Source: Ranitomeya imitator (Eukaryota). Taken from it: a stretch of DNA of 64,000 nt. A program made the translations under genes and the position numbers. Location: assembly GCF_032444005.1 (NCBI RefSeq), contig NC_091288.1, positions 218,054,001 to 218,118,000 of the forward strand, written 5' to 3'. The notes under the pieces were generated by a model. The model did no database searches, had not been told where the DNA came from, and saw nothing but the letters and a program-made list of their open reading frames with translations. Below, piece by piece: positions 1 to 14,400 of this stretch. Numbering within the stretch: position 1 is the stretch's first letter; each line of letters begins with the position of its first letter.

Positions 1-1226
1 GATGACATAAGAGCAGACAAGAGTAGCCGGATGAATTCTGAAGTGGACCGGGATATACTTTCAGCCCAGATTCAGCCAAATGCTGCAAAGTTGATTGGAC
101 GGCGCTTCATAGTACAGATGGACAATGACCCCAAGCATACAGCCAAAGCTACCCAGGAGTTCATGAGTGCCAAAAAGTGGCACATTCTGCAATGGCCAAG
201 TCAATCTCCAGATCTAAACCCAATTGAGCATGCATTTCACTTGCTCAAATCCAGACTTAGGGTGCCGTCACACAGTGCAATTTTGATCGCTACGACGGCA
301 CGATTTGTGACGTTGCATCGTCGCTTAATTATCGTTTCAAACATCGTAGACTGCGGTCACACTACACGATGCACGGCGCTGAAGCGATAAATTCATGACG
401 TATTTGCGATGTAGAAGTCGTATGGGACAGTCGTACGGTCGTGTCACACACGACGATTCAGAGCAAATTTTGCATAATCTGTGCGTGACGTTGTTCACTG
501 GGGGCGTGTTGTGCTACTTGCTAGTGTGCTGATAGGCCAAAGGTTCTGTGCACACAATTGGTTGGAAAATTTGTCACCTGAGCGCTATTGTTCCCAATGC
601 CACCTCACTGCTTTCAAAATTTCCTTTCTTCACTTCGTACTTGGACACTTGGTGGACCTGGACATTGGAATTTTGTACTTCGCTGAATATACCACGCTTT
701 GCACCGCTGCTTCGAGGTATGTAAACCGCTTGGGCGTGGTGGATGGAACGCTGTATGGACGGCATGAGTGCTTCGTTCCACCGCTGAAGCGAAGCGGATG
801 GTACACTGTTGTGACTGGAGGGCTACAATGTGACAGATGGTACGCTGTTGTGACTGGTCGTGACTGGTGGGCTACAGCGTGGTAGATGGGACGCAGTTTG
901 GTCGGCATGACCGCTTCGTTCCGCCGCTGAAGCGATGCGGATGGTACGCTGTTGTGACTGCTTATGACCGGTTGTGTCTGTTGAGCTAGAGCGTGGCAGA
1001 TGGTACAATGTATGGTCACCATGAGCGCTTTGTGTGGCTGCTGTAGTGAAGCAGGCGGTACACTGTTTTGGGTTATGGTGGCCTATGGCGTGGCAGATGG
1101 AAGAAGCGATGGTAGGCATGAGTGCTTTGTGTGGCTGCTGTTGTTAAGCGTTTGACACACTGGCAAAAGTATTGTTTAAAGGACTCTTTGTCAACCGTGT
1201 AATTTTTTTTTATAATTATTTTTCAG

Positions 1227-2650
1227 ATGTCAAATCGTGTGGAGTTCATCAGGGATTTCATCGAGATTTATCAGTCTTTTCCCTGCCTCTGGAAAATAAA
1301 ATCTCCTGAGTATTGTAACAGGGAAAAGAGGAGGGAGGGTTACTTAAAGCTCATTGAGCTTTACAATCGTCATGCACCAGAAGAGGCAGCAAACGAAGCA
1401 GTTATTAAAAAGAAAATCCAGGCGCTCCGCACGGTGTGGAGGAAGGAGCTGAACAAGGTTCTTCAGACTACAAGGTCCGGAGCTTCCACTGAAGATGTTT
1501 ATGTGCCAAAACTTTGGTATTTTGAACATCTTAATTTTCTGAGGGACCAAGAGGTGCCACAGACTTCCACGTGTCTTCGCTTGTTGGCACCTGTGGAACC
1601 AATAGTTTCGGAGAACCACGCCGAGCAGGAGTCACAAGGGCAACAAGTAAGTAGCTCTTTGGACGAAAGTTCACCAATGTGTCCTATAATTACATAAATT
1701 TTCTCTGCATTTTATGTTTTATACTTCTGATTATCACATCAGTTTGAAGTTGTTACAAAAACATGTCCACATAAGTAACCCTGTCGCAGTAAAGTATTAT
1801 ATGGGGAACTTAATATGTATGAAATGGCGATATATCTAAACCATACCATCTAAGCAATATAGAAAATAGTATCGCTTCCAGCTGCAGATGTTTTCTTGTT
1901 GAGACTATTTAGACTATAAAATATTGGTCAGGTTCCCCTAGCAGTCAGAACAGTGTAGTTCAAAGTATTAAATAAAAGGGAGGGTTAAAGAATATTACTA
2001 AGCTTAAAATATATTATAATCTTTTTTTTTTACCTACTACGAATATATAGTTTGGATGCGGTTATGGTGGTACAACTTTTTGTTGCCGGGTTCATAACTT
2101 GTTTTTTTTTCCCCCCCCCCAGGATGACAGTGCGCAGGAGAGTACACTGGACTGTTCACAGGACTGCACGACAACTGATTTAGTGGAGGCTGCACCTGCC
2201 AGGACTCAATCGAGGCAAGGTCCAAGAAAACGGAAAGCCACCTCAGACGCCTCACATGAACTATTGAGCCTTGCAAAGAAGGTGTTGACAAGAAATGTTA
2301 GCCCTGCGTTGCAGGGGTTTGGACACTATGTGGTTGACAAACTGGCCAAAATGGACGACAACCAAAGAATACTAGCAGAGCGTCTGATTCTGGAAGCAGT
2401 GAACAGGGGTACAGATGGCGATTTGGACAAGAACACTTGTTTGGTCTCTTCCCGGCCAATACAGCGGACAGAGCCATCAAATTACAATGGTTGGTCACAG
2501 TGTCAGACATCGATGCGACACAATCCTCACGTTTCCCACTTCGGCCAGCCACCCCCTAATAACTCCTACACGCCAATACCGTCACATATGGCTTCGCCCA
2601 TCAGGCACCAAAGTTTTCAGCCGGAACAATCGTCGTATCATAATTTGTGA
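1227..2650 (+). CDS. Harbinger MADF/Myb-like DNA-binding partner protein, exons 1227-1646 and 2123-2650 (~315 aa)
   Basis: N-terminus FIRDFIEIYQSFPCLWKIKSPEYCNREKRREGYLKL...IKKKIQALRTVWRKEL fits the MADF pattern. Donor caa|gtaagt at 1646/1647 and acceptor ccccag|gat at 2122/2123 give an in-frame phase-0 join. C-terminal FGHYVVDKLAKMDDNQRILAERLILEAV is BESS-like. AATAAA at 2709. Confidence 0.85.
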
Positions 2651-2889
2651 TTTCCTAACTTCTTTTACATTCCTTTTTATTTTATTGTCTTGTTAAAATA
2701 ATGTTTCAAATAAAAGCTTTTATTAGAAATTCTATCACTACTTTTTGATTGGTGTGTCTCGATCACAGCACTGTATGAGGGCACAAATTAACGTAACAAA
2801 TTCATGTACAGTTAACTAAAAAAAAAAATCGAATGAAAGTTTAACAAAATCTTTTAATTGGAACAACAAAAAATGGATTATTGGCCCGC

Positions 2890-5481
2890 CTACAACTGCT
2901 GGCACATGTCCCGCAGCTTCTGCAGCTCCTCCATTGCCACATTGTGCTGCTCCTGAATACGCGCCATAGTGTGGATTAGCTTTTCTATGCCGGCTTCAAG
3001 ATCCTCCTTGTTGACAGTGACGAGAGCTGTGGGTCAAAAAACATAACATTAATAACACAGTAGTCTCCCGATGTGTCTTTGCTTCTGTGAAGGAAAAAAA
3101 AAAAAAACAGTCAGCATATAAGGGCAAAACTGACTTGGGGGGGGGGGGGGGGGGTGTTTGGGTTGGGGGTGAAAGAGTGGGCCTGCAACAAAATCAAAAT
3201 AACTTTATTGTGGGAACCTACTAGGATGTTGAGGCACGGAGGGCACTTCGGGATCTGAGTCTGTGTCGAATGCCTCGTGCTGTCGGCGGCGGCGCTGTCT
3301 CTTTGCCTCTGTGAAGGGAACAAAACAAAAAAAAGGTCTGTCAGCATATATGGCAACACTGGCTGCCGGGGGAGGGGGTGGGGGGGAAGAGGGGACCTGC
3401 AACTTAATCCAAATCACATAATTGTGGGAACCTACTAGGATCTGGAGGAGTAGACCCGGAGGGCACAGATGTAGAAGAGGCTGTGCGGGATGCCTCGTGG
3501 CGGCGGTGGTGCTGTGTCTTTGCCTCTGTGAAGGGAAAAAAAAAAAAAAAAGGTCTGTCAGCATATATGGCAACACTGGCTGCCGGGGGGGGGGGGGGAG
3601 GAGGGGACCTGCAACCAAATCCAAATCACATTATTGTGGGAACCTACTAGGATCAGTTGTCTTTGACCCGGAGGGCTCTGGGACTTCAGAGGCGGTGTGA
3701 GAAGCCTCGTCGCTACGGCGGCGCTGTCTCTTTGCCTCTGTGAAGGAAAAAAAAAGTTCGGTCAGCAGTTAGCTGTGCCACATAGTACTTTTCACCGTTC
3801 ATACTGTCCCATAGCTGTTGGACATAGTGGCTCTGCAACGTTCAAACTGTCCCATAGCTGTGGCACTGCAACGTTGAAACTGTCCCATAGGTGTGGCACA
3901 TAGTGGCTCTGCAACGTTCAAACTGTCCCATAACTGTGGCACATAGTGGCTCTGCAACGTTGAAACTGTCCCATAGCTGTGGCACATAGTGGCTCTGCAA
4001 CGTTCATACTGTCCCATAGCTGTTGGACATAGTGGCTCTGCAACGTTGAAACTGTCCCATAACTGTGGCACATAGTGGCTCTGCAACGTTCATACTGTCC
4101 CATAGCTGTGGCACATAGTGGCTCTGCAACGTTGAAACTGTCCCATAACTGTGGCACATAGTGGCTCTGCAACGTTCATACTGTCCCATAGCTGTGGCAC
4201 ATAGTGGCTCTGCAACGTTGAAACTGTCCCATAGGTGTGGCACATAGTGGCTCTGCAACGTTCATACTGTCCCATAGCTGTGGCACATAGTGGCTCTGCA
4301 ACGTTGAAACTGTCCCATAACTGTGGCACATAGTGGCTCTGCAACGTTCATACTGTCCCATAGCTGTGACACATAGTGGCTCTGCAACGTTGAAACTGTC
4401 CGATAGGTGTGGCACATAGTGGCTCTGCAACATTCATACTGTCCCATAGGTGTGGCACATAGTGGCTCTGCAACGTTCATACTGTCCCATAGCTGTGGCA
4501 CATAGTGGCTCTGCAACGTTCATACTGTCCCATAGCTGTGGCACATAGGGGCTCTGCAACGTTCAAACTGTTCCCATAGCTGTGACACATAGTGGCTCTG
4601 CAACGTTGAAACTGTCCGATAGGTGTGGCACATAGTGGCTCTGCAACATTCATACTGTCCCATAGGTGTGGCACATAGTGGCTCTGCAACGTTCATACTG
4701 TCCCATAGCTGTGGCACATAGTGGCTCTGCAACGTTCATACTGTCCCATAGCTGTGGCACATAGTGGCTCTGCAACGTTCATACTGTCCCATAGGTGTGG
4801 CACATAGTGGCTCTGCAACGTTCATACTGTCCCATAGCTGTGGCACATAGTGGCTCTGCAACGTTCATACTGTCCCATAGCTGTGGCACATAGTGGCTCT
4901 GCAACGTTCATACTGTCCCATAGCTGTGACACATAGTGGCTCTGCAACGTTCATACTGTCCCATAGCTGTGGCACATAGTGGCTCTGCAACGTTCATACT
5001 GTCCCATAGCTGTGGCACATAGGGGCTCTGCAACGTTCAAACTGTCCCATAGCTGTGACACATAGTGGCTCTGCAACGTTCAAACTGCCCCATAGCTGTG
5101 GCACATAGTGGCTCTGCAACGTTCATACTGTCCCATAGCTGTGACACATAGTGGCTCTGCAACGTTCAAACTGCCCCATAGCTGTGCCACATACTTTTGG
5201 GTACCTGAGTACTAACCTCTGCTAATCTCCTGGCGAAGCTCCTGCAGGCGCTCTGGGCTTTTCGACTTGAGATCGCCCCATTTTTTCACTATCTGGGCCT
5301 TGCTGCGCGTTATCCCAAACCGCTTCCTGAGGCCCTCAGACACCACACGGACAACTTCCTCCTTGTGCTGGTTGCGGTGCAGCACCATCCCTGTGGTTTC
5401 ATACTGCATCCTATCCATTGTTCCAATAAGGAACTTGAGCTCTGGGATGCCCATAGGTGGACCACGGCGACTGGCAGCCAT
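2890..5481 (-). CDS. Harbinger accessory gene A: Myb/SANT-like domain, repeated basic modules, C-terminal coiled coil (~222 aa). Exons 5481-5217, 3737-3648, 3525-3436, 3308-3222, 3026-2890
   Basis: Exon 1 MAASRRGPPMGIPELKFLIGTM...RFGITRSKAQIVKKWGDLKSK has the RS..Q..KKW.DLK signature of MSANTD/NAIF1-type domains. Donor G|gttagt. Three 87-90 nt phase 1-1 exons lie between ttcacag| and |gtaggt. The last exon TLVTVNKEDLEAGIEKLIHTMARIQEQHNVAMEELQKLRDMCQQL* is in frame. Total 669 nt, open. Confidence 0.75.
3775..5190. repeat. 43-bp tandem minisatellite (~33 copies) in intron 1 of accessory gene A
   Basis: Unit gtggcacatagtggctctgcaacgttcatactgtcccatagct. Alternating ttgaaa/ttcata variants give an 86-bp higher-order period around 3900-4400. 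Confidence 0.95.
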
Positions 5482-5763
5482 TATCACGATGTCAGGGGAC
5501 AAAAACAAGCTAGGGCAGGCACGCAGGAACGCTGTACGTCATCACGCCGTCATAGACCACGAGCGTACATTACGTGCCGCTCCGGCGTTATATAACGATC
5601 CTTCGAACGGCATTTACTATGTGCGTTCCTTTCGTAACGCTCAGTCGTCACAAATGTGACGCTGTTCATAAACGGCAACGCTATTGCGATGCCAATGGCG
5701 CGGCAGGACGGCGGAGCGCTGCTCCTCCTCTGGGCGTTGCTCTTCAGGGTCATTCCATCTAAA
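5482..5763. promoter_or_regulatory. Putative bidirectional promoter between accessory genes A and B
   Basis: 282-bp CpG-rich gap between two head-to-head ATGs (5481 on -, 5764 on +). Near-palindrome cgtcacaaatgtgacg at 5646-5661. Confidence 0.5.
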
Positions 5764-7646
5764 ATGGCGGCGAGAATGCGTTCTGCTCCTCTGGGGCAGC
5801 CAGAACTCCTTTTTTTTTATTTCCCAGATGGATGCCATGGATTACGAGGGTCTGGAGAGCCGCCCTGCCCACCCACACATCCACAAGCGGGAAGTGCTTG
5901 GCCACATAACAAGAATGATGGAGAGGAGGTTTGGCGTCTGCCGCAGTCAGCTTCAGCTGCGTAAAAAATGGGCTGACCTCCGCTATAAAACGCCACAAAT
6001 GTTTGCGGAGTTGCGTGCGGAGGCAAGGCGAGGCAAGTACTAGTATGGGGGGATTGGGAGATGCATGCTGTCAGGAGGGGGGGGTTTGGGAGGGAGGCTT
6101 GCGCTCATGGTTGCCAACTTCACCTCAAATGCATTAAAACACATGCCCCGTTTTTTAAAAATTTAGTTATTTTCCAAGCAGAATATGCGTTGTCCGTGAG
6201 AAAACTTGTCGGGTTCCCTAATCTCAACCACCATCTTGAAATTATTAAGATGTCCATAATTTTTACTTTCTCAATTTCCCATAAATATTAACGGAGGAGG
6301 TTGGCCTACTGATGAAATAATACGTTTTCCAAAGACAGGAAGACCATTGAACCCCAGAGCCCACAGACATGTCAGAGTATCGCACCCCTGTAAAGTGTGA
6401 TCTCGATTTTATGTTTGAGTATATTGTAAGCTTTGCTCTGCAGCACTCAACATTTGTGTGTAAACATTGTGATTCTTTACTTTAGGTGTAGAGAGACAGC
6501 GGCGGCGGCAAGTCAGACACACCATTGCCACCAGTACCCCATCTTCTGACACCAGTGGGAGCCCACAGTCCGGGACATCACGTAAGTTCACAATCATTTA
6601 TTGCATTTTTTTTAACATCACACGGGACATAACAGGGTAGCTGAAATATTTGAAGACATTACAGACGCAGTAATGACCCAGCGGCCTACCACACCTCCAC
6701 CATCTGTTGCGACCATGCACCCTCGCACCCCTGTGAAGTGTGATATAAATTTTATGTTTCAGTATATTGTTAGCTTTGATCTGCAGCACTCTACATGTGT
6801 TTTTAAAGATTGCGTTTGTTAACTTTCTGTGTAGAGAGACAGCGGCGGCAACAGGTACCTGCCATTGCCAGCAGCACCACAGCATCCACCACCAGCGGGA
6901 GCCCAGAGCCCGGGACGTCACGTAAGTTAACAATCATAGATTACAGTTTTTCAACTGCATACGGGACATAAGAGGGTAGCGGAAATATTTGAATACATTA
7001 CAGACGCAGTAATGACCCAGCGGCCTACCACGCCACCACCAGACAGCAGACGGCCTCGCACCCCTACACCACCCTCAACACCTCCCTTCCGACACTCCTC
7101 TTCCTCCCCCGGGTCGGCGGCATTCTCCCCAGAAGCTAACATACGTAAGTGACCAAAACAGCAAGCGCTTCCCAACGGCGTGTTCCATAGTTAACCAGAT
7201 CTGTTATAATTTCCTTTTACCTGCTGCAGCAGAGGCCAGATCGCTGGGATGGGACATTAGCAGCTCTGGTTCTGGCAATGAGGAACCGGCGTCCCTTCTC
7301 CGTAAGTATCAAGATAATGCGAGTGGTTTTCTGCTGGATGTCACCATAGACAACCAAAACTGTAAAATTTAATAAAATTTACATCGCCCTGTGGTGCCAG
7401 ACCAAATAGAAATTTACAACACAGAAAATTAGGTCCTGCCCCAGAGGTCGAGATGTATTTTCAGAGGAATCAACGTTGGTTCTCCAACCTCTTCTATCCA
7501 CAGAACCGCCCACCGTAAGAGAGCTCCTGGCGAGACAATTGCGACTGGAGCGGACAGCAGCGCTCCTGCAGCAGACAGCAGCGCTCCTCCAGAGTCAAGT
7601 GGAGCAGCAGGGCGTGACGCTGCGACACCTCTTGGGCCGGAGATAA
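5764..7646 (+). CDS. Harbinger accessory gene B: paralog of gene A (Myb/SANT-like, basic/Ser-Pro modules, coiled coil; ~279 aa core). Exons 5764-6032, 6492-6581, 6835-6921, 7004-7144, 7230-7301, 7465-7646; further small exons possible; +1 T in a homopolymer near 5810-5818
   Basis: Removing one T from a 9-T run gives MAARMRSAPLGQPELLFFISQMDAMDYE...RFGVCRSQLQLRKKWADLRYK, collinear with gene A. Donor is G|gcaagt (GC-AG consensus). Internal exons of 90, 87, 141 and 72 nt are all phase 1-1 with gtaagt donors. Last exon ...VRELLARQLRLERTAALLQQTAALLQSQVEQQGVTLRHLLGRR*. Confidence 0.7.
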
Positions 7647-7849
7647 TTTTTTTTTTTGGGGGGGGTTATGTTATATTTTGTTGTAAAATAATTTAAAACC
7701 AAGAAAGTGTTACAAAAAAACCAAAAATCTTCGCATTCTTTCTTTAATGTTTACCAAGCTATAAGGGTTAACAGCACCATTTTATAGGCATCACATTTAA
7801 AATTATTTAGAGAGGTTTATATGACAGCAAAGCAAAAAAAAAATTTTTT

Positions 7850-9574
7850 TTATACGGCGCGATCCTGCCAGGGTACAGCTCCAGAACCATTAAAGTACTG
7901 ACAGTATTTTTCGCGACAGTCCCTTGCATCGTCTGCCTGTCTGCCAGATCCAAGAGCTTGAAGAGCTGTAAAATTTTCAGGTTGTGTACGCCATTCCCCG
8001 GGCACAATATCTCCGGTTCGTGCGTCCACTGCATCAATAAACGAAGGAGGAGAATAGGAGCTCGTATCATGACGTCTCAGGAAATTATGGAGCACACAGC
8101 ATGCCAAAACCACAAAGTCTATAGTCGGCAGCTTCAAGTTGATAGCTGTGTGGAACACTCTAAACCGATTTGCCATAATCCCAAAGGCATTTTCAACCAC
8201 ACGACGGGCCCTCGACAACCGGTAATTAAAGATTCTGCGCTCCGGTGTGAGTGTTCTCTGTGCAAATGGCTTCAGCAAATGTGGATGAAGAGGGAAAGCT
8301 TCATCAGCGATGAAGACAAAATTTAGGTTTGCTTTTGTGTCTTCATTTAGTGGCAACAGCAGTTCATTGTTCCTCAAGCTTTCCCCAAATGAAGTGTGTT
8401 CAAAAACACCACCGTCGGAGACTCGACCATTCATGCCAACATCTACATCGACAAACTCATAGTTCGCATTGACAAGGGCCATGAGGATCACACTGAAATA
8501 TCCTTTGTAGTTGAAAAAGAAGGATCCAGAGTTGGCTGGTTGCGTGATGCGCACATGCTTTCCATCTAATGCACCACCGCAGTTTGGAAACTGCCACAGC
8601 TCATCAAAATCGGAAGCAATCCTCTTCCAGTCATCCGCCGTCTTGGGAAACTGCAAGATGAGAAGGAAACATGTACAAATTAGGTCAAATATATTATGCA
8701 CATACACTCTCATGTGCACATCCTACAGTGAATGAGGCGCAGTATGGATTAGTATAACAAAGTCAACAACACAGAGTATGCAGGCAGCCATTTTTTCAGA
8801 TGGCTTCGGTGACTCAGAGGGGGTGCTAAACAATATATCTAAATTATATAATCAATAAAATTACGTTGGGAGCAGCAAATAAAAGAAGGGTGGCGCAGGG
8901 TTGGAGCAGCACATATCAGAATGGAGCCGCAAAATGGTAGCAGCACATGTCAGAATGGAGGCGCAGGATCACAGCAGCACATGTCTGAATGGGGGCGCAG
9001 GATGGGAGCAGCACATGATAGGATGTAGAACATATACCAATAGAAATGCTCGCCATCAGGGCGTAGAACGGGTTCAATAGCTAGTATAATATATCGACAT
9101 AACACAGCAGCCAAAAAAATATAGTAGTACCTCCATATAATGCCTTAAGCTCTGCACAATGGCCTCGCATGTCTCCGGAATCACAACGCTCAGGAAAGGT
9201 CTGGAAACAGCTGCGGAAAACTGCAAATCCTGAAGAGACCTTCCTGTTGCCAGGAAGCGCAGTGTCACCGCCAACCTTTCCTCCACGGGCACGGCTGCAC
9301 GCATCGGCGTATCACACCTTTGTATGAGTGGCGTAACAGCAGACAGTATTATCTTGAAGGATTCCTCGGACATCCGAAGGTAGTTTCGGAAATCATGAGG
9401 GTTATTGTCACGTAACTCTCTTATGAGACCCATGTGTGACAATGTGGATCTTTTCTGCAGCCAGCTCCGGGTCCACATGCGACGTTTTCGTTTAGGACGT
9501 CTCTCCTCTTGGAGACGTGCTGCCTCAAACACCAGGGCAGCAGCAACAACAGAACTCTCATCGGAAGTGAGCAT
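7850..9574 (-). CDS. Harbinger (HARBI1-like, DDE_Tnp_4-type) transposase, exons 9574-9131 and 8650-7850 (~414 aa), uninterrupted
   Basis: Motifs FRNYLRMSEESF, VEERLAVTLRFLATG, GALDGKH, DGGVF, ADEAFPL, RRVVENAFG, VLACCVLHNF. Donor gag|gtacta and acceptor ttgcag|ttt are in frame. No stops or frameshifts. Confidence 0.93.
8860..9084 (+). mobile_element. Helitron-like 3' end fragment inside the transposase intron (5' boundary uncertain)
   Basis: gcagcacatg...aggatggga repeats followed by ...aaatgctcgccatcagggcgtagaacgggttcaatagCTAG|t, nearly identical to the CTAG-terminated end at 35770-35838. Confidence 0.55.
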
Positions 9575-10829
9575 AGTTCCTAAAAAGAAAACAAACGTAC
9601 AATAAATACACGTGCTTACAAAACAATGTTCTGACCATTGATCTAATAACTATATATGTTACTACTGGTATTAAATGGGGCAGTCAACCATCTCGATCTG
9701 TAAAAGGATTAATTAATTGGGCCACGCAACAGCTGTGTACCTGAGGTTCTCAGGCCTACCCTACTCTCCATAAAGGAACAATCGACCACGCTACAGCGTT
9801 TATCCCCGTTGAAGCGCAACATATGCTACGCTGTAGCGTTATACATACCTTTTGCGGTAAAAGTCTAGTAGTTAAAGGTCCAGGGAATCCAGCGAATTTA
9901 GGAGTTCTGTTCACAGCACGTGCTACAGAGAGAAATGAATAGCGCGCTCGAGAGCTCCGGTTTTATCCGCTGGGAACAATAGTCCTTTGTCGAATGAGCG
10001 CACAGTATTGTACCGCCCAATCAGCACACGGGAGGTGGAGAATTCAGCGCTCCTACATAGCCAGCTCCTCCGCCCTTTACATCGTATACAATATCGTGCA
10101 CACCTTTGTCACACCATGCGATCATGCCGCCACAGCGGGACACTGGACGACGAAAGAAAGTTTCAAACGATCTGCTACGACGTACGATTCACAGCGGGGT
10201 CCCTGATCGCAGGAGCGTGTCACACGCTGCGATAGCGTACCTATATCGCTCGAACGTCACAAATCGTGCCGTCGTAGCGATCAAAATTGCACTGTGTGAC
10301 GGTACCTTTAAGACGGAAAGACCCACAAACAAGCAAGACCTGAAGGCTGCGGCTGTAAAGGCCTGGCAAAGCATTAAGAAGGAGGAAACCCAGCGTTTGG
10401 TGATGTCCATGGGTTCCAGACTTAAGGCAGTGATTGCCTCCAAAGGATTTGCAACAAAATATTGAAAATAAAAATATTTTGTTTGGGTTATGTTTATTTG
10501 TCCAATTACTTTTGACCTCCTAAAATGTGGAGTGTTTGTAAAGAAATGTGTACAATTCCTACATTTTCTATCAGATATTTTTGTTCAACCCTTCAAATTA
10601 AACGTTACAATCTGCACTTGAATTCTGTTGTAGAGGTTTCATTTCAAATCCAATGTGGTGGCATGCAGAGCCCAACTCGCGAAAATTGTGTCACTGTCCA
10701 AATATTTCTGGCCCTAACTGTATCTGTAGCCCTATATACCGGCCACGCACTGACTCCAGGATTGTAGACCCCTGTGATGATGGTTAGTTGACACACCGCG
10801 ATCTAACATGTCCCTTGTGTCACATTATT

Positions 10830-11033
10830 TTCAGGGTTCCATCATTTCTGTCCAGGACGATTTCATCAGTTGTTTTTTTTTAATTCTGTGGAGGAAAAGC
10901 AATGTCTGACTCTCATCTGTTCATTTTCATAGATCTTTTTCTTGTTACCTTTGTCAGATTCAAGTTATTTCTGTGACCACTGTGGGTTTTTCTGTCATTA
11001 AACGAGCGGCACCAACAATTTTGACCTCGTGTG
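10830..11033 (+). mobile_element. Probable 3' terminal fragment of another Tc1-like element
   Basis: Ends in ...ccaacaattttgacctcgtgtg followed by TA, resembling a Tc1 TIR end. No partner TIR in the window. Confidence 0.35.
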
Positions 11034-11455
11034 TACATCCATGACTAATGTGGGGCAGGTCCCGGCCATTAATACCAGTGTGGGCAGCGCTGTGGGATGA
11101 CTGACTGTCACTCGCCCTGAACAGAAACTATCAGATTTTAAAGGGGGAAAAAAAGGTCCATTTATTTACAGGTGACAAGAAGCACAAAACTGAGGGGGGC
11201 AGACCGAAGCTTCTGGGGCAGTAATCATCCCAGGCCGTCCTCTCGGCCGATCCTCCCCAACTACAAGTCCCAGGTGTCCGGGCGGTCAAGGCATGCTGAG
11301 GTCTGCCACTTTTTGCAAGAAATGTGTGTGAGCGTGAAATAGTTAAATACATAAAGCAGCCGATGTTTGAACTTCAGATTGTGGGTGACCGAGGAAGTGT
11401 CCACAAGATGGCGCTCTGCTCAGTTCTGCTGCAGTTACAGTCCAGCTGGTGGCGC

Positions 11456-14400
11456 TCAGTACTTCCGCTGGCGAGGAAAGATGGCGGATGAGCGCTTTGG
11501 GGTAGGCACAGAGTCCGGGTCCATATCGAACAGATCGCGGCCGGTCTTCAGGATCTGCTCCTCGATCTTCTTGTGTCGCTTCATGTCGGACAGCACCTTG
11601 TCCATCCGAGCCTCTCTCTTCTGACTGCGGGTCGAGCTCCCTGGCAAACAGAAAATAAAGAGTTAAATATGTATGTTTACACGCAGACACCAGAAGACCA
11701 CCCTGTGGCCGGACAGCTCATCCAAGGCTGTGGCTACTACTCCCTCCACCATGCTTTACACTGCAGTCCTGCCCTATCAGTGTATGGCTATACACTGCTG
11801 TACTAACAGGCGCTCCCCTCCCCCATCACTTACCGGGCGTTCGCCGCCTGTCAATCAATGAGTTTTTCGGAGTGATAGGTTCATCATTGAAATCGAACTC
11901 TGTGGGGATGGAAGGCCTGCGGGGGAAAAAGAGACAGTCAGCTCCGCTATCATGTAATTCATCATTCATCGTCTGGACGAAGCAATGATCACACAGCTGA
12001 AGGTTCGTTACAATGGATCCAACCACTGAAGACGCTGCATCTACAGCAGTGAAACGTGTCGGGAAGGAGCAGAGGCCGTAAAGTTATTAACCCCTTGCCT
12101 CCGCAGCGCTTTTGTATTTTTTCCTCACCTTCATTTCCAGGACCCGTAGCTTTTGTTTTTAATTCTTCCATTCGCACAGACATACAAGGGCTCGTATTTT
12201 GGGAATCACTCTTCTTTTTCCCCCCATGTAAAATGCTAAAAAAAAAATCCATCTGCAGAGAAATAGTCTGTAACTCCATTATAGTTACTCTGGGTTTCGT
12301 TTTTGCTGCAGTAAAAGTCACCAGGTAGCCCCGTTCCCCGGTCGGTACGATTACACCCGCAGCCAAACACTTATTACAATTTAGTGAGAAAACAACAAGT
12401 TGCCATTTTCCACTTTCTCAGACCCTCTATTTTCCCGTCTGTATCGCCGGATCGAGGCTCAGTTTGTTTCCGCTATTTACTGAGACCACTTTCCCGCAGC
12501 GACACCTGCTATGGTGCAGACTCAGCTCCTGGTCCCGCAGCGACACCTGGTACAGTGCAGGCTCAGCTACCGACCCCACAGCGACACCTGGTACGGCGCA
12601 GGCTCAGCTACCGACCCCGCAGCGACACCTGGTACAGCGCAGGCTCAGCTCCTGATCCCGCAGCGACACTTGGTACAGCGCAGGCTCAGCTCCTGATCCC
12701 GCAGCGACACCTGGTACAGCGCAGGCTCAGCTCATGATCCCGCAGCGACACCTGGTACAGCGCAGGCTCAGCTCATGATCCCGCAGCGACACCTGGTACA
12801 GCGCATGCTCAGCTACTGACGCCGCAGCGACACCTGGTACAGCGCAGGCTCAGCTCCTGATCCAGCAGAAACACCTGGTACAGCGCAGGCTCAGCTCATG
12901 ATCCCGCAGCGACACCTGGTACAGCGCAGGCTCAGCTCATGATCCCGCAGCGACACCTGGTACAGCGCATGCTCAGCTACTGACGCCGCAGCGACACCTG
13001 GTACAGCGCAGGCTCAGCTCCTGATCCAGCAGAAACACCTGGTACAGCGCAGGCTCAGCTACCGACCCCGCAGCGACACCTGGTACAGCGCAGGCTCAGC
13101 TCCTGATCCCGCAGCGACACCTGGTACAGCGCATGCTCAGCTACCGACCCCGCAGCGACACCTGGTACAGCGCAGGCTCAGCTCCTGATCCCGCAGCGAC
13201 CCTTGGTACAGCGCAGGCTCAGCTCCTGATCCCGCAGCGACACCTGGTACAGCGCAGGCTCAGCTCCTGATCCCGCAGCGACACCTGGTACAGCGCAGGC
13301 TCAGCTCATGATCCCGCAGCGACACCTGGTACAGCGCAGGCTCAGCTCATGATCCCGCAGCGACACCTGGTACAGCGCATGCTCAGCTACTGACGCCGCA
13401 GCGACACCTGGTACAGCGCAGGCTCAGCTCCTGATCCAGCAGAAACACCTGGTACAGCGCAGGCTCAGCTCATGATCCCGCAGCGACACCTGGTACAGCG
13501 CAGGCTCAGCTCATGATCCCGCAGCGACACCTGGTACAGCGCATGCTCAGCTACTGACGCCGCAGCGACACCTGGTACAGCGCAGGCTCAGCTCCTGATC
13601 CAGCAGAAACACCTGGTACAGCGCAGGCTCAGCTACCGACCCCGCAGCGACACCTGGTACAGCGCAGGCTCAGCTCCTGATCCCGCAGCGACACCTGGTA
13701 CAGCGCATGCTCAGCTACCGACCCCGCAGCGACACCTGGTACAGCGCAGGCTCAGCTCCTGATCCCGCAGCGACCCTTGGTACAGCGCAGGCTCAGCTCC
13801 TGATCCCGCAGCGACACCTGGTACAGCGCAGGCTCAGCTCCTGATCCCGCAGCGACACCTGGTACAGCGCAGGCTCAGCTCATGATCCCGCAGCGACACC
13901 TGGTACAGCGCAGGCTCAGCTCATGATCCCGCAGCGACACCTGGTACAGCGCATGCTCAGCTACTGACGCCGCAGCGACACCTGGTACAGCGCAGGCTCA
14001 GCTCCTGATCCAGCAGAAACACCTGGTACAGCGCAGGCTCAGCTCATGATCCCGCAGCGACACCTGGTACAGCGCAGGCTCAGCTCATGATCCCGCAGCG
14101 ACACCTGGTACAGCGCATGCTCAGCTACTGACGCCGCAGCGACACCTGGTACAGCGCAGGCTCAGCTCCTGATCCAGCAGAAACATCTGGTACAGCGCAG
14201 GCTCAGCTACCGACCCCGCAGCGACACCTGGTACAGCGCAGGCTCAGCTCCTGATCCCGCAGCGACACCTGGTACAGCGCATGCTCAGCTACCGACCCCG
14301 CAGCGACACCTGGTACAGCGCAGGCTCAGCTACCGACCCCGCAGCGACACCTGGTACAGCGCACGCTCAGCTACCGACCCCGCAGCGACACCTGGTACAG

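What the first reader, a model, noticed from the sequence alone, without database searches (positions are those of the whole stretch)
260..10307. 10-kb PIF/Harbinger transposon carrying four multi-exon genes rather than the canonical two
Seen: between matching TIRs and a TTA TSD lie a MADF gene (+, 1227-2650), Myb/SANT gene A (-, 5481-2890), Myb/SANT gene B (+, 5764-7646) and an uninterrupted DDE transposase (-, 9574-7850). They form two convergent pairs around a central divergent promoter. Established: autonomous Harbingers typically encode one transposase plus one Myb/SANT or MADF partner needed for transposition; HARBI1/NAIF1 and MSANTD genes were domesticated from such elements. Inference: this lineage carries three DNA-binding-type accessory proteins of two classes. 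It may be an undescribed multi-component Harbinger system in which the extra proteins regulate, target or counter silencing of the element. It could also be a living source for MSANTD-like host genes.
Basis: partly seen in the sequence, partly recalled or inferred. Interest (0 to 1): 0.88.

Follow-up and report, generated by a model that had tools for sequence, protein, structure and literature searches.

The report
Four-gene Harbinger transposon in poison frog
A young, expressed Harbinger jumping gene of the poison frog Ranitomeya imitator carries four spliced genes instead of the textbook two (transposase, a MADF protein and two old paralogous Myb/SANT-like proteins), and this layout belongs to the whole multi-copy family, not to one accidental copy.

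Summary
Window 260-10307 is a PIF/Harbinger element with 54-bp TIRs and a TTA duplication. Removing it restores the reading frame of the Tc1-like transposase it interrupts.

It carries four genes:
- MADF, 315 aa, 2 coding exons.
- Gene A, 222 aa, 5 exons.
- Gene B, 6 exons.
- A DDE_Tnp_4 transposase, 414 aa.

Correction 1: the transposase is not uninterrupted. It has a 480-bp intron, confirmed by RNA contigs.
Correction 2: in this copy gene B is frameshifted in a T-run. RNA contigs and other DNA copies have one T fewer and are in frame.

A and B are NAIF1/MSANTD-type Myb/SANT (trihelix) proteins with heptad-patterned C-termini.

The middle is family-wide:
- Five other R. imitator loci keep the 5.0-6.3 kb spacing between transposase and MADF.
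- DNA runs of two organisms hold gene B at a depth near that of the transposase.
- Differences between copies fall on third codon positions (13 of 16).
- Gene B is spliced in two RNA studies.

A Xenopus laevis element bounded by TIRs holds transposase, MADF and one such Myb gene, so the three-gene core is old. The second Myb gene is the Ranitomeya-lineage addition.

This scan flagged the same layout in other windows. I found no paper describing it. The functions of A and B are inferred, not shown.

The parts
257..259 (.). left copy of the TTA target-site duplication
   Evidence: sequence; the empty-site reconstruction restores the Tc1-like ORF
260..314 (+). left terminal inverted repeat, with CGTCACA heptamers at 266 and 306 (inverted)
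260..716 (+). CpG-rich left end (o/e 1.23). Inferred MADF promoter and 5'UTR exon. Holds subterminal TGTCACAC/GTCACAC repeats at 267, 356 and 443. A putative 5'UTR intron spans 717-1226.
   Evidence: The splice sites were read from the sequence and are not RNA-tested.
1227..1646 (+). MADF gene, coding exon 1 (MADF domain)
   Evidence: Pfam MADF_DNA_bdg 3e-16; gene model
2123..2650 (+). MADF gene, coding exon 2 (total 315 aa; no BESS domain detected)
   Evidence: The 315-aa MADF genes annotated at four other loci have the same length.
5217..5481 (-). gene A exon 1: Myb/SANT-like trihelix domain
   Evidence: Of the 6 variants between copies, 5 are at the third codon position.
3770..5193 (.). 43-bp x 33 minisatellite inside intron 1 of gene A
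3222..3737 (-). gene A exons 2-4 (3737-3648, 3525-3436, 3308-3222). These are three tandemly duplicated basic exons, all phase 1, in a 212-bp repeat unit.
   Evidence: The A-type RefSeq models P0121 and P0122 have 4-7 such units.
2890..3026 (-). gene A last exon: C-terminal helix with a heptad pattern (coiled-coil-like), then the stop codon
   Evidence: weak ZapB-like hit in the relative P0122
5482..5763 (.). CpG-rich centre (o/e 1.42) between the divergent genes A and B. Inferred bidirectional promoter. Contains the palindrome CGTCACAAATGTGACG at 5646-5661, which shares a 10-mer with both TIRs.
5764..5817 (+). gene B N-terminal piece (MAARMRSAPLGQPELLFF). It is out of frame with the rest in this copy, next to the T9 run at 5810-5818.
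   Evidence: (one base left out at 5810 in other copies and in RNA)
5828..7646 (+). gene B. Exons: 5828-6036, 6496-6581, 6835-6921, 7004-7144, 7230-7301, 7504-7646 (245 aa from ATG 5828). It encodes a Myb/SANT-like domain, basic and S/T/P-rich repeats and a C-terminal helix.
   Evidence: gene model. RNA-only GT..AG joints at 6581>6835, 6581>7004 and 7301>7504. The exon 1-exon 2 junction is not seen among the listed joints.
7850..8650 (-). transposase exon 2 (DDE_Tnp_4 catalytic domain with the motifs ALDGKH, ADEAF and VENAFG)
   Evidence: 97.8% identical to P0001
8651..9130 (-). transposase intron. It holds a 34-bp repeat that is very high-copy elsewhere in the genome.
   Evidence: joint 8650>9131 in RNA runs X1 and X7 only; RNA depth is 0 in bin 8680-8853
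9131..9574 (-). transposase exon 1 (148 aa, with a basic KRKRR stretch)
   Evidence: 99.3% identical to P0001
9579..9847 (-). transposase 5'UTR intron
   Evidence: RNA joint 9578>9848 (CT..AC) in run X7
9848..10307 (-). CpG-rich right end (o/e 1.28). Inferred transposase promoter. Subterminal TGTCACAC at 10107 and 10218. The last ~235 bp are shared with a far more abundant MITE-like family.
10253..10307 (-). right terminal inverted repeat
10308..10310 (.). right copy of the TTA target-site duplication

Best explanation
This is one copy of a young, transcribed, multi-copy PIF/Harbinger family of Ranitomeya imitator. The family's standard gene set is four genes.

LAYOUT
- Inward from the left end: a MADF protein.
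- Inward from the right end: a one-intron DDE_Tnp_4 transposase.
- Outward from a CpG-rich centre: two anciently diverged paralogs, A and B. Each has an N-terminal NAIF1/MSANTD-type Myb/SANT trihelix domain, repeated basic exons, and a C-terminal helix with a heptad pattern.

HISTORY
The core of transposase, MADF and one Myb/SANT gene is old in frogs. It is found in Xenopus laevis and in Anomaloglossus. The second Myb/SANT gene is the addition in this lineage.

THIS COPY
This copy has intact MADF, A and transposase genes but a frameshifted B. It probably depends on B supplied in trans.

MECHANISM (INFERRED)
The inference is by analogy with Harbinger3_DR and rice PIF/Pong. There the Myb-like partner binds subterminal repeats and recruits or imports the transposase. 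Here:
- MADF and the Myb/SANT proteins would bind the repeated CGTCACA/GTCACAC motifs in the two ends.
- A and B would pair through their C-terminal helices and help bring the ends and the transposase together.
- The same motif, as a palindrome in the A/B promoter, would let the element's own proteins feed back on A/B expression.

SHOWN HERE
Element boundaries, gene models, family-wide layout, splicing of B and of the transposase, and purifying selection on A and B.

NOT SHOWN
Any DNA binding, protein pairing, or requirement of A or B for transposition.
For: - Boundaries and precise insertion: and the empty-site reads.
- Domains: MADF 3e-16 and DDE_Tnp_4 9e-33.
- A/B family: 13 of 22 members hit Myb_DNA-bind_4 and _5. 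The AF2 model has pLDDT 79.6. Its best Swiss-Prot fold matches are MSANTD4/3, NAIF1, MYPOP, TSNARE1 and GT trihelix proteins, TM 0.6-0.7 by query. Protein-atlas features agree.
- Copy number: the transposase's 90%-identity cluster has 74 member sequences in R. imitator.
- Layout elsewhere: four loci with an identical transposase and one with a 95% identical one have MADF 5.0-6.3 kb beyond the transposase on the opposite strand, as in the window. The locus of an 87% A-type gene reads transposase, a 2.7-kb gap, A, then MADF.
- Splicing: RNA-only GT..AG joints occur in gene B and in the transposase in two studies. RNA depth is zero in the transposase intron, which argues against DNA contamination.
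- Depth: gene B DNA depth is about 0.5x (same species) and 0.85x (organism B) that of the transposase.
- Selection: 13 of 16 listed coding differences between copies are third-position and 10 are synonymous, P about 1e-4.
- Xenopus: a 5.6-kb TIR-bounded element holds transposase, MADF and a Myb_DNA-bind_5 gene.
- Anomaloglossus: the same trio of genes lies adjacent.
- Motifs and CpG islands at the three control regions.
Against: - Gene A splicing was not seen directly. RNA contigs run through its first 5' splice site. NCBI calls no gene in the middle of the five close copies.
- The exon 1-exon 2 junction of B is not among the listed joints.
- About 60% of same-species DNA depth carries the frameshifted T9 form of B, so many copies may lack a full-length B.
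- No DNA of other R. imitator copies could be fetched. That A and B lie inside them is inferred from spacing, depth and variant contigs.
- Summed contig depth is not a copy number.
- The motif link between the TIRs and the centre was found post hoc (about 0.02 for the 10-mer).
- Repbase and Dfam could not be consulted.
Confidence: 0.8

Rival explanations
1. A and B are family-wide passengers, or regulators, that are not part of the transposition machinery. Only the transposase and MADF, the canonical pair, move the element. A and B persist because they benefit the element indirectly, for example by repressing it, countering silencing or choosing targets, or simply by hitch-hiking.
For: - MADF alone is the partner in insect and nematode Harbingers (PMC9710019, PMC13668399).
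- Many copies appear to carry the frameshifted B.
- NCBI annotates only the transposase and MADF in the close copies.
- The palindrome in the A/B promoter suggests a regulatory loop.
Against: - A Myb/SANT gene of this family sits with transposase and MADF in Xenopus, Anomaloglossus and Ranitomeya. That is long retention for a passenger.
- Differences between copies show third-position bias.
- NAIF1-type proteins are the proven transposase partner in the fish element Harbinger3_DR (Sinzelle 2008, as cited).
Confidence: 0.3
2. The 2.8-7.7 kb middle is a one-off capture of host genes, or a nested insertion, in this copy only.
For: The middle holds minisatellites, and no gene is annotated there in NCBI's close copies.
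Against: - Five other loci keep the same transposase-MADF spacing.
- Many variant contigs cover gene B in DNA of two organisms.
- There is no internal TIR pair.
- Relatives of A and B are found next to Harbinger genes in three frog lineages.
Confidence: 0.03
3. A and B are decaying pseudogenes, relics of an old duplication. Their open frames and RNA signal would then reflect youth and read-through transcription, not function.
For: - B is frameshifted here and in much of the DNA depth.
- RNA contigs cover the introns and the centre as well as the exons.
- Pfam support on the window's own sequences is weak.
Against: - A and B are only 42% identical and share no DNA-level repeat. They are therefore old, yet both keep multi-exon open frames.
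- 13 of 16 differences are third-position.
- The expressed contigs carry the in-frame B form.
- Splicing is canonical, and the alternative isoform is also in frame.
Confidence: 0.07

Closest known systems
Canonical autonomous PIF/Harbinger elements (zebrafish Harbinger3_DR, rice PIF/Pong, insect and Caenorhabditis PIF-like elements)
   Same: - DDE_Tnp_4 transposase with the D..D..E motifs.
- 3-bp TTA target duplication.
- TIRs with subterminal repeats.
- A separate Myb/SANT- or MADF-type DNA-binding partner gene.
- Abundant MITE-like derivatives that share the ends.
   Different: - Four genes instead of two.
- Both partner classes (MADF and NAIF1-type trihelix) sit in one element, and the trihelix class is present twice.
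- All genes are multi-exon.
- The middle genes are driven from an internal CpG-rich divergent promoter.
- Length is 10 kb.
Three-gene frog Harbingers (Xenopus laevis element in L002 at about 5911-11500; the Anomaloglossus baeobatrachus locus of P0124; earlier scan note s1-274988)
   Same: The same three protein families: transposase 59-72% identical, MADF, and a Myb/SANT plus C-terminal-helix protein. In Xenopus they lie inside 26-bp TIRs with a TWA flank.
   Different: - Only one Myb/SANT gene.
- The gene order differs. Xenopus reads Tnp>, <MADF, Myb>. Anomaloglossus reads Tnp>, Myb>, <MADF.
- The elements are shorter (5.6 kb in Xenopus).
Harbinger-derived host genes NAIF1, MSANTD1-4, TSNARE1 and MYPOP (PMC9392472)
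   Same: The best fold matches of the gene A domain (TM 0.6-0.7). They share the N-terminal trihelix Myb/SANT domain, and several have C-terminal coiled-coil regions.
   Different: - Those are single-copy, syntenic host genes without TIRs.
- A and B are multi-copy, sit inside a mobile element, and share no significant sequence identity with them (9-19% in the structural alignments).

Membership tests
PIF/Harbinger superfamily of DNA transposons | DDE_Tnp_4 (PIF/IS5-like) transposase with the catalytic D, D, E motifs | tested here: met
   - Pfam DDE_Tnp_4 9e-33 and Plant_tran 7e-9.
- A 414-aa open frame after splicing, with ALDGKH, ADEAF and VENAFG present.
- Hits named HARBI1-like.
PIF/Harbinger superfamily of DNA transposons | 3-bp TWA target-site duplication and terminal inverted repeats | tested here: met
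   TTA on both sides. 54-bp TIRs, 98% complementary. The empty site restores the host Tc1 ORF and is seen in reads.
PIF/Harbinger superfamily of DNA transposons | a second gene for a Myb/SANT- or MADF-type DNA-binding partner | tested here: met
   MADF 3e-16, plus two Myb/SANT-like genes.
PIF/Harbinger superfamily of DNA transposons | the transposase needs the partner protein for transposition | not testable with these tools
   Needs excision and integration assays.
Myb/SANT-like trihelix proteins of Harbingers (Pfam Myb_DNA-bind_4/5; NAIF1/MSANTD type), for genes A and B | a sequence match to Myb_DNA-bind_4 or Myb_DNA-bind_5 above the curated cut-off | tested here: inconclusive
   - Window gene A: 17.8 bits against a cut-off of 27.
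- Window gene B: no hit.
- 13 of 22 family members hit both models at E<=0.01 (best about 2e-5), mostly below the cut-off.
- The Xenopus relative reaches 21.9 bits against a cut-off of 21.7.
Myb/SANT-like trihelix proteins of Harbingers (Pfam Myb_DNA-bind_4/5; NAIF1/MSANTD type), for genes A and B | a three-helix Myb/SANT (trihelix) fold | tested here: met
   - AF2 model with pLDDT 79.6 and four predicted helices: three forming the Myb/SANT-type bundle, then a short fourth.
- The top Swiss-Prot matches are MSANTD4/3, NAIF1, MYPOP, TSNARE1 and GT-3b, with probability 0.8-0.97 and TM 0.6-0.7 by query.
- In PDB, Zeste and GT-1, TM 0.54-0.57.
- The E-values are weak because the domain is short.
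Myb/SANT-like trihelix proteins of Harbingers (Pfam Myb_DNA-bind_4/5; NAIF1/MSANTD type), for genes A and B | binds the element's subterminal repeats and interacts with the transposase | not testable with these tools
   Only candidate motifs were found.
MADF-BESS proteins, for the MADF gene | an N-terminal MADF domain | tested here: met
   PF10545 3e-16, covering the full model 1-84.
MADF-BESS proteins, for the MADF gene | a C-terminal BESS motif | tested here: not met
   No Pfam hit in exon 2, even at E<=5. I therefore call it a MADF protein, not a MADF-BESS protein.

The most novel reading that the evidence does not exclude
The frog Harbinger lineage has evolved a multi-component transposition machine with division of labour.
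- MADF and two distinct NAIF1-type proteins each recognise their own sites in the ends.
- A and B pair through their C-terminal helices to bridge the two ends.
- The same proteins bind the CGTCACA palindrome in their own promoter. The element would thus measure and limit its own activity: a self-regulating DNA transposon with an internal control region.

This would also make it a living model for how NAIF1/HARBI1-type and MSANTD-type host genes arose, including KRAB fusions such as the one in Bufo.
Probability: 0.2. Interest if true: 0.8.

Novelty: new variant of a known kind. Interest (0 to 1): 0.62.

Why it matters
Harbingers are defined in reviews and recent papers by exactly two genes. Their partner proteins gave vertebrates NAIF1, HARBI1 and the MSANTD genes.

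Here a recently active, expressed family carries both partner classes, one of them twice, with signs of selection on all of them. That makes several questions directly testable:
- Which partner does which job: end recognition, nuclear import, synapsis or regulation.
- Why the trio has been kept from Xenopus to poison frogs.
- How DNA-binding genes multiply inside a transposon before the host domesticates them.

Practically, these spliced transposon genes are annotated in RefSeq as host proteins under misleading names ('serine/arginine repetitive matrix protein 2-like', 'anion exchange protein 3-like'). That matters for frog genome annotation.

Tried and rejected
DNA OF OTHER COPIES
- I tried to fetch DNA of other R. 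imitator copies, and the Anomaloglossus locus, through the look-up of encoding contigs. All such loci were listed without DNA because the files are too large. Copy-by-copy alignment was therefore impossible.
- Two Xenopus proteins were not on record.

STRETCH USED FOR READS
- For read laying I chose 5200-10400, which avoids the 1.4-kb minisatellite. Gene A's downstream junctions and the MADF gene were therefore not tested with reads.

SEARCHES WITHOUT A RESULT
- Profile search of A/B against PDB sequences: nothing significant.
- Foldseek against PDB: no hit at E<=0.001. Only Zeste and GT-1 matched, at TM about 0.55.
- Pfam BESS or any other domain in MADF exon 2 and in transposase exon 1: none.
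- Rfam on the element: nothing.
- Other copies or MITEs of this family elsewhere in the 64-kb window: none.

OTHER
- A maximum-likelihood tree of the 88-aa domain is unresolved. It cannot say whether A or B is the ortholog of the single gene in the three-gene elements.
- I rejected my first gene B models. The first gave a wrong start for exon 2 and an internal frame error. The model was corrected.
- The context of the transposase family that is 73% identical was uninformative.

Full report
1. WHAT IS AT THE COORDINATES

The only long inverted repeat in window 1-11500 is a 54-nt pair at 261-314 and 10253-10306, 98% complementary. A 30-nt probe from it matches only these two places in the 64-kb window, against zero expected by chance.

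The element (260-10307) is flanked by TTA on both sides. It lies inside a Tc1-like transposase gene (Pfam DDE_3, 3e-12). Joining 31-259 to 10311-10465 gives one uninterrupted reading frame through the site. A same-species DNA run also contains Tc1 copies with the empty site (loose end at 10308). So this is a precise Harbinger-type insertion with a 3-bp TTA duplication.

2. THE FOUR GENES

MADF (+)
- Coding exons 1227-1646 and 2123-2650, 315 aa, open.
- A full-length MADF domain (3e-16).
- No BESS motif was detected.

Transposase (-)
- Coding exons 9574-9131 and 8650-7850, 414 aa, open.
- DDE_Tnp_4 at 9e-33, with the ALDGKH, ADEAF and VENAFG motifs.
- It is 98-99% identical to R. imitator protein P0001.
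The 480-bp intron is spliced out in RNA contigs of two runs (joint 8650>9131, CT..AC) and never in the DNA runs. A 5'UTR intron (9578>9848) is also seen.

Gene A (-)
- Five exons with canonical splice sites (5481-5217, 3737-3648, 3525-3436, 3308-3222, 3026-2890), 222 aa.
- Exons 2-4 are three tandem duplicates of a basic, phase-1 exon inside a 212-bp repeat.
- Intron 1 holds a 43-bp x 33 minisatellite.

Gene B (+)
- Six exons (5828-6036, 6496-6581, 6835-6921, 7004-7144, 7230-7301, 7504-7646), 245 aa.
- Three of its junctions, including an in-frame skip of exon 3, appear as GT..AG joints in the RNA runs X1 and X7. These come from two different studies. The joints are absent from both DNA runs.
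This is clearly homologous to the N-termini of gene A and of relatives. In this copy it is out of frame with the rest of the gene.
- The window has nine T at 5810-5818. All RNA contigs, organism-B DNA and about 40% of same-species DNA depth have one T fewer, which puts 5764 in frame.
- So this copy's B is frameshifted, while the family has intact and expressed B genes.

Layout
- The three inferred control regions are the only strongly CpG-rich parts. CpG o/e is 1.23 at the left end, 1.42 at the centre and 1.28 at the right end, against 0.71 for the whole element.

3. WHAT A AND B ARE

- The window's own sequences give only a weak Pfam signal: Myb_DNA-bind_4 at 0.006 for A, and nothing for B.
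- An exhaustive HMMER search of 1.8 billion cluster representatives with A exon 1 found only 22 relatives.
- All named relatives are from frogs: Ranitomeya, Phyllobates, Anomaloglossus, Xenopus laevis, Lithobates and Bufo.
- Thirteen of the 22 aligned members hit both Myb_DNA-bind_4 and Myb_DNA-bind_5.
- An AlphaFold model built on that alignment (pLDDT 79.6) has four predicted helices: three form the Myb/SANT-type bundle and a short fourth follows.
- Its best Swiss-Prot fold matches are MSANTD4, MSANTD3, NAIF1, MYPOP, TSNARE1 and plant GT trihelix factors (TM 0.6-0.7 by query). In PDB the matches are Zeste and GT-1. Protein-language-model neighbours are also all Myb_DNA-bind_3/4/5 clusters.
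- A and B are therefore NAIF1/MSANTD-type Harbinger 'Myb-like' proteins.
- Their C-terminal exons show a 3-4 hydrophobic spacing over about five heptads (read from the translation). An A-type relative has a weak ZapB-like hit. The coiled-coil label is plausible but rests on sequence only.
- A and B are only 42% identical in the domain. They do not group together in a tree, which is unresolved. They leave no DNA-level inverted repeat. They are old paralogs, not a recent duplication.

4. IS THE MIDDLE A FAMILY FEATURE?

The evidence:
a) The transposase's 90%-identity cluster has 74 member sequences in R. imitator.
b) Four other loci with an identical 414-aa transposase each have a 315-aa MADF gene on the opposite strand, 5.1-6.3 kb beyond the transposase stop. 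A locus with a 95% identical transposase has one at 5.0 kb. The window's spacing is 5.2 kb. The variation in length fits the minisatellite.
c) RefSeq model XP_069617890 (P0121) is 87% identical to A. It lies between a DDE_Tnp_4 gene and a MADF gene in the window's order and orientation, with a 2.7-kb gap where B would be.
d) In the DNA runs, the gene B region is covered by many variant contigs. Its summed depth is about 0.5x that of the transposase in the same species and about 0.85x in a second organism. The tool warns that this depth is not a copy number.
e) Of the 16 best-supported differences between copies that fall in my coding exons, 13 are third-position and 10 are synonymous (P about 1e-4). 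Gene A exon 1 has 5 of 6 at the third position. Gene B has 7 of 9.
f) RNA depth is zero in the transposase intron bin, so the RNA libraries are not visibly contaminated with DNA. Yet gene A exon 1, the centre and gene B are covered.

Together these make a one-off capture or a nested insertion very unlikely.

Limits:
- I could not fetch DNA of the other copies.
- NCBI annotates no gene in their middle.
- Gene A splicing was not seen directly. RNA contigs run through its first 5' splice site, and the stretch I laid did not include its other junctions.
- The exon 1-exon 2 junction of B is not among the listed joints.

5. HOW OLD IS THE ARRANGEMENT?

- In Anomaloglossus baeobatrachus, a 418-aa transposase, a 247-aa B-like Myb/SANT protein and a 304-aa MADF protein are adjacent.
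- In R. imitator, another B-like gene converges on a MADF gene.
- In Xenopus laevis I could read the DNA (L002). A 26-bp perfect inverted repeat (5906-5931 and 11480-11505) with a TTA/TAA flank encloses three genes:
  - a DDE_Tnp_4 transposase (3e-31, 60% identical to the window's);
  - a MADF gene (1e-6);
  - a Myb_DNA-bind_5 gene, 21.9 bits, just above Pfam's cut-off.
- This agrees with the earlier scan note s1-274988. The three-gene core predates the split of Xenopus from neobatrachian frogs. The four-gene form, with two diverged Myb/SANT genes, is so far seen only in the Ranitomeya family.
- Other first-reader notes in this scan (s1-288129, s1-294663) report the same layout on other pieces of this genome. 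I did not check them.

6. MECHANISM (INFERRED)

- In Harbinger3_DR and rice PIF/Pong, the Myb-like partner binds subterminal repeats and recruits or imports the transposase. This is established knowledge, cited in PMC9710019 and PMC9392472.
- The heptamer CGTCACA occurs at the tip and the inner edge of each TIR. It occurs twice more, as the palindrome CGTCACAAATGTGACG, in the centre of the A/B promoter (5646-5661).
- The 10-mer ATTTGTGACG occurs only three times in 64 kb: in both TIRs and in that palindrome.
- TGTCACAC recurs in both subterminal regions.
- I therefore propose three things. MADF and the Myb/SANT proteins bind these motifs. A and B pair through their C-terminal helices and help assemble the ends with the transposase. 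The central palindrome allows feedback on A/B expression.
- The motif link was found post hoc (about 0.02 for the 10-mer). No binding, pairing or requirement has been shown.
- The main rival is that A and B are regulators or passengers and only transposase plus MADF do the cutting and pasting.

7. COMPARISON WITH WHAT IS KNOWN, AND NOVELTY

- All defining features of PIF/Harbinger that could be tested are met.
- The literature held here, including 2022 and 2026 papers, describes Harbingers as two-gene elements. Searches for three-gene or ORF3 Harbingers found nothing relevant.
- Repbase and Dfam were not available, so an existing consensus with these genes cannot be excluded.
- I rate this a new variant of a known kind. 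It is interesting to transposon biologists, and it has been flagged repeatedly by this scan on other DNA of the same genome.

Noticed in passing
window 1-259 and 10311-10465: The host of the insertion is a Tc1-like (DDE_3) transposon. Its transposase reading frame is continuous across the empty site. Other copies with the empty site are present in the DNA run.
   Followed up: partly
window 10072-10307: The last ~235 bp of the element have roughly 100 times the contig depth of its interior in all four runs. Contigs diverge inward at 10079, 10148 and 10225. A very abundant MITE-like family appears to share this end.
   Followed up: partly
window 8854-9201: The 34/68-bp tandem repeat inside the transposase intron has about 100-fold higher depth than its surroundings in both DNA and RNA runs. 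It belongs to a high-copy repeat found elsewhere in the genome.
   Followed up: no
window 3770-5193: A 43-bp x 33 minisatellite (92% matches) fills most of intron 1 of gene A. On the minus strand it reads as a string of overlapping 84-aa ORFs. Its length probably explains the 5.0-6.3 kb variation in spacing between copies.
   Followed up: partly
window 5646-5661: The palindrome CGTCACAAATGTGACG sits in the A/B intergenic centre. Its 10-mer ATTTGTGACG otherwise occurs only in the two TIRs within the 64 kb. No variant is listed at these positions among the contig differences shown, of which only the best supported are shown.
   Followed up: partly
window 6046-6428: A 383-bp deletion variant (with CT inserted) in intron 1 of gene B occurs both in an RNA-run contig and in organism-B DNA. 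It marks a distinct subfamily of copies and is not a splice.
   Followed up: no
window 6581-7004: Gene B is alternatively spliced. Exon 3, one of two duplicated basic exons, is skipped in one RNA run, and both isoforms stay in frame. The number of such duplicated exons also varies between A-type relatives, from 4 to 7 units in P0122 and P0121.
   Followed up: partly
proteins P0130 and P0146 (Bufo bufo and Bufo gargarizans, 656 aa): Relatives of the A/B domain occur in toad proteins that have an N-terminal KRAB box and Myb_DNA-bind_5 hits in two stretches. The proteins fall in one 90%-identity cluster across two Bufo species. They are a candidate domesticated KRAB-Myb/SANT fusion.
   Followed up: no
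proteins P0121 and P0122 (R. imitator RefSeq): A-type transposon genes are annotated as 'serine/arginine repetitive matrix protein 2-like' and 'anion exchange protein 3-like'. These are misleading automatic names, caused by the low-complexity basic repeats.
   Followed up: no
L002 5906-11505 (Xenopus laevis, CM030347.1): A 5.6-kb Harbinger with perfect 26-bp TIRs holds transposase, MADF and a Myb_DNA-bind_5 gene. The gene order (Tnp>, <MADF, Myb>) differs from that in the dendrobatid elements.
   Followed up: yes
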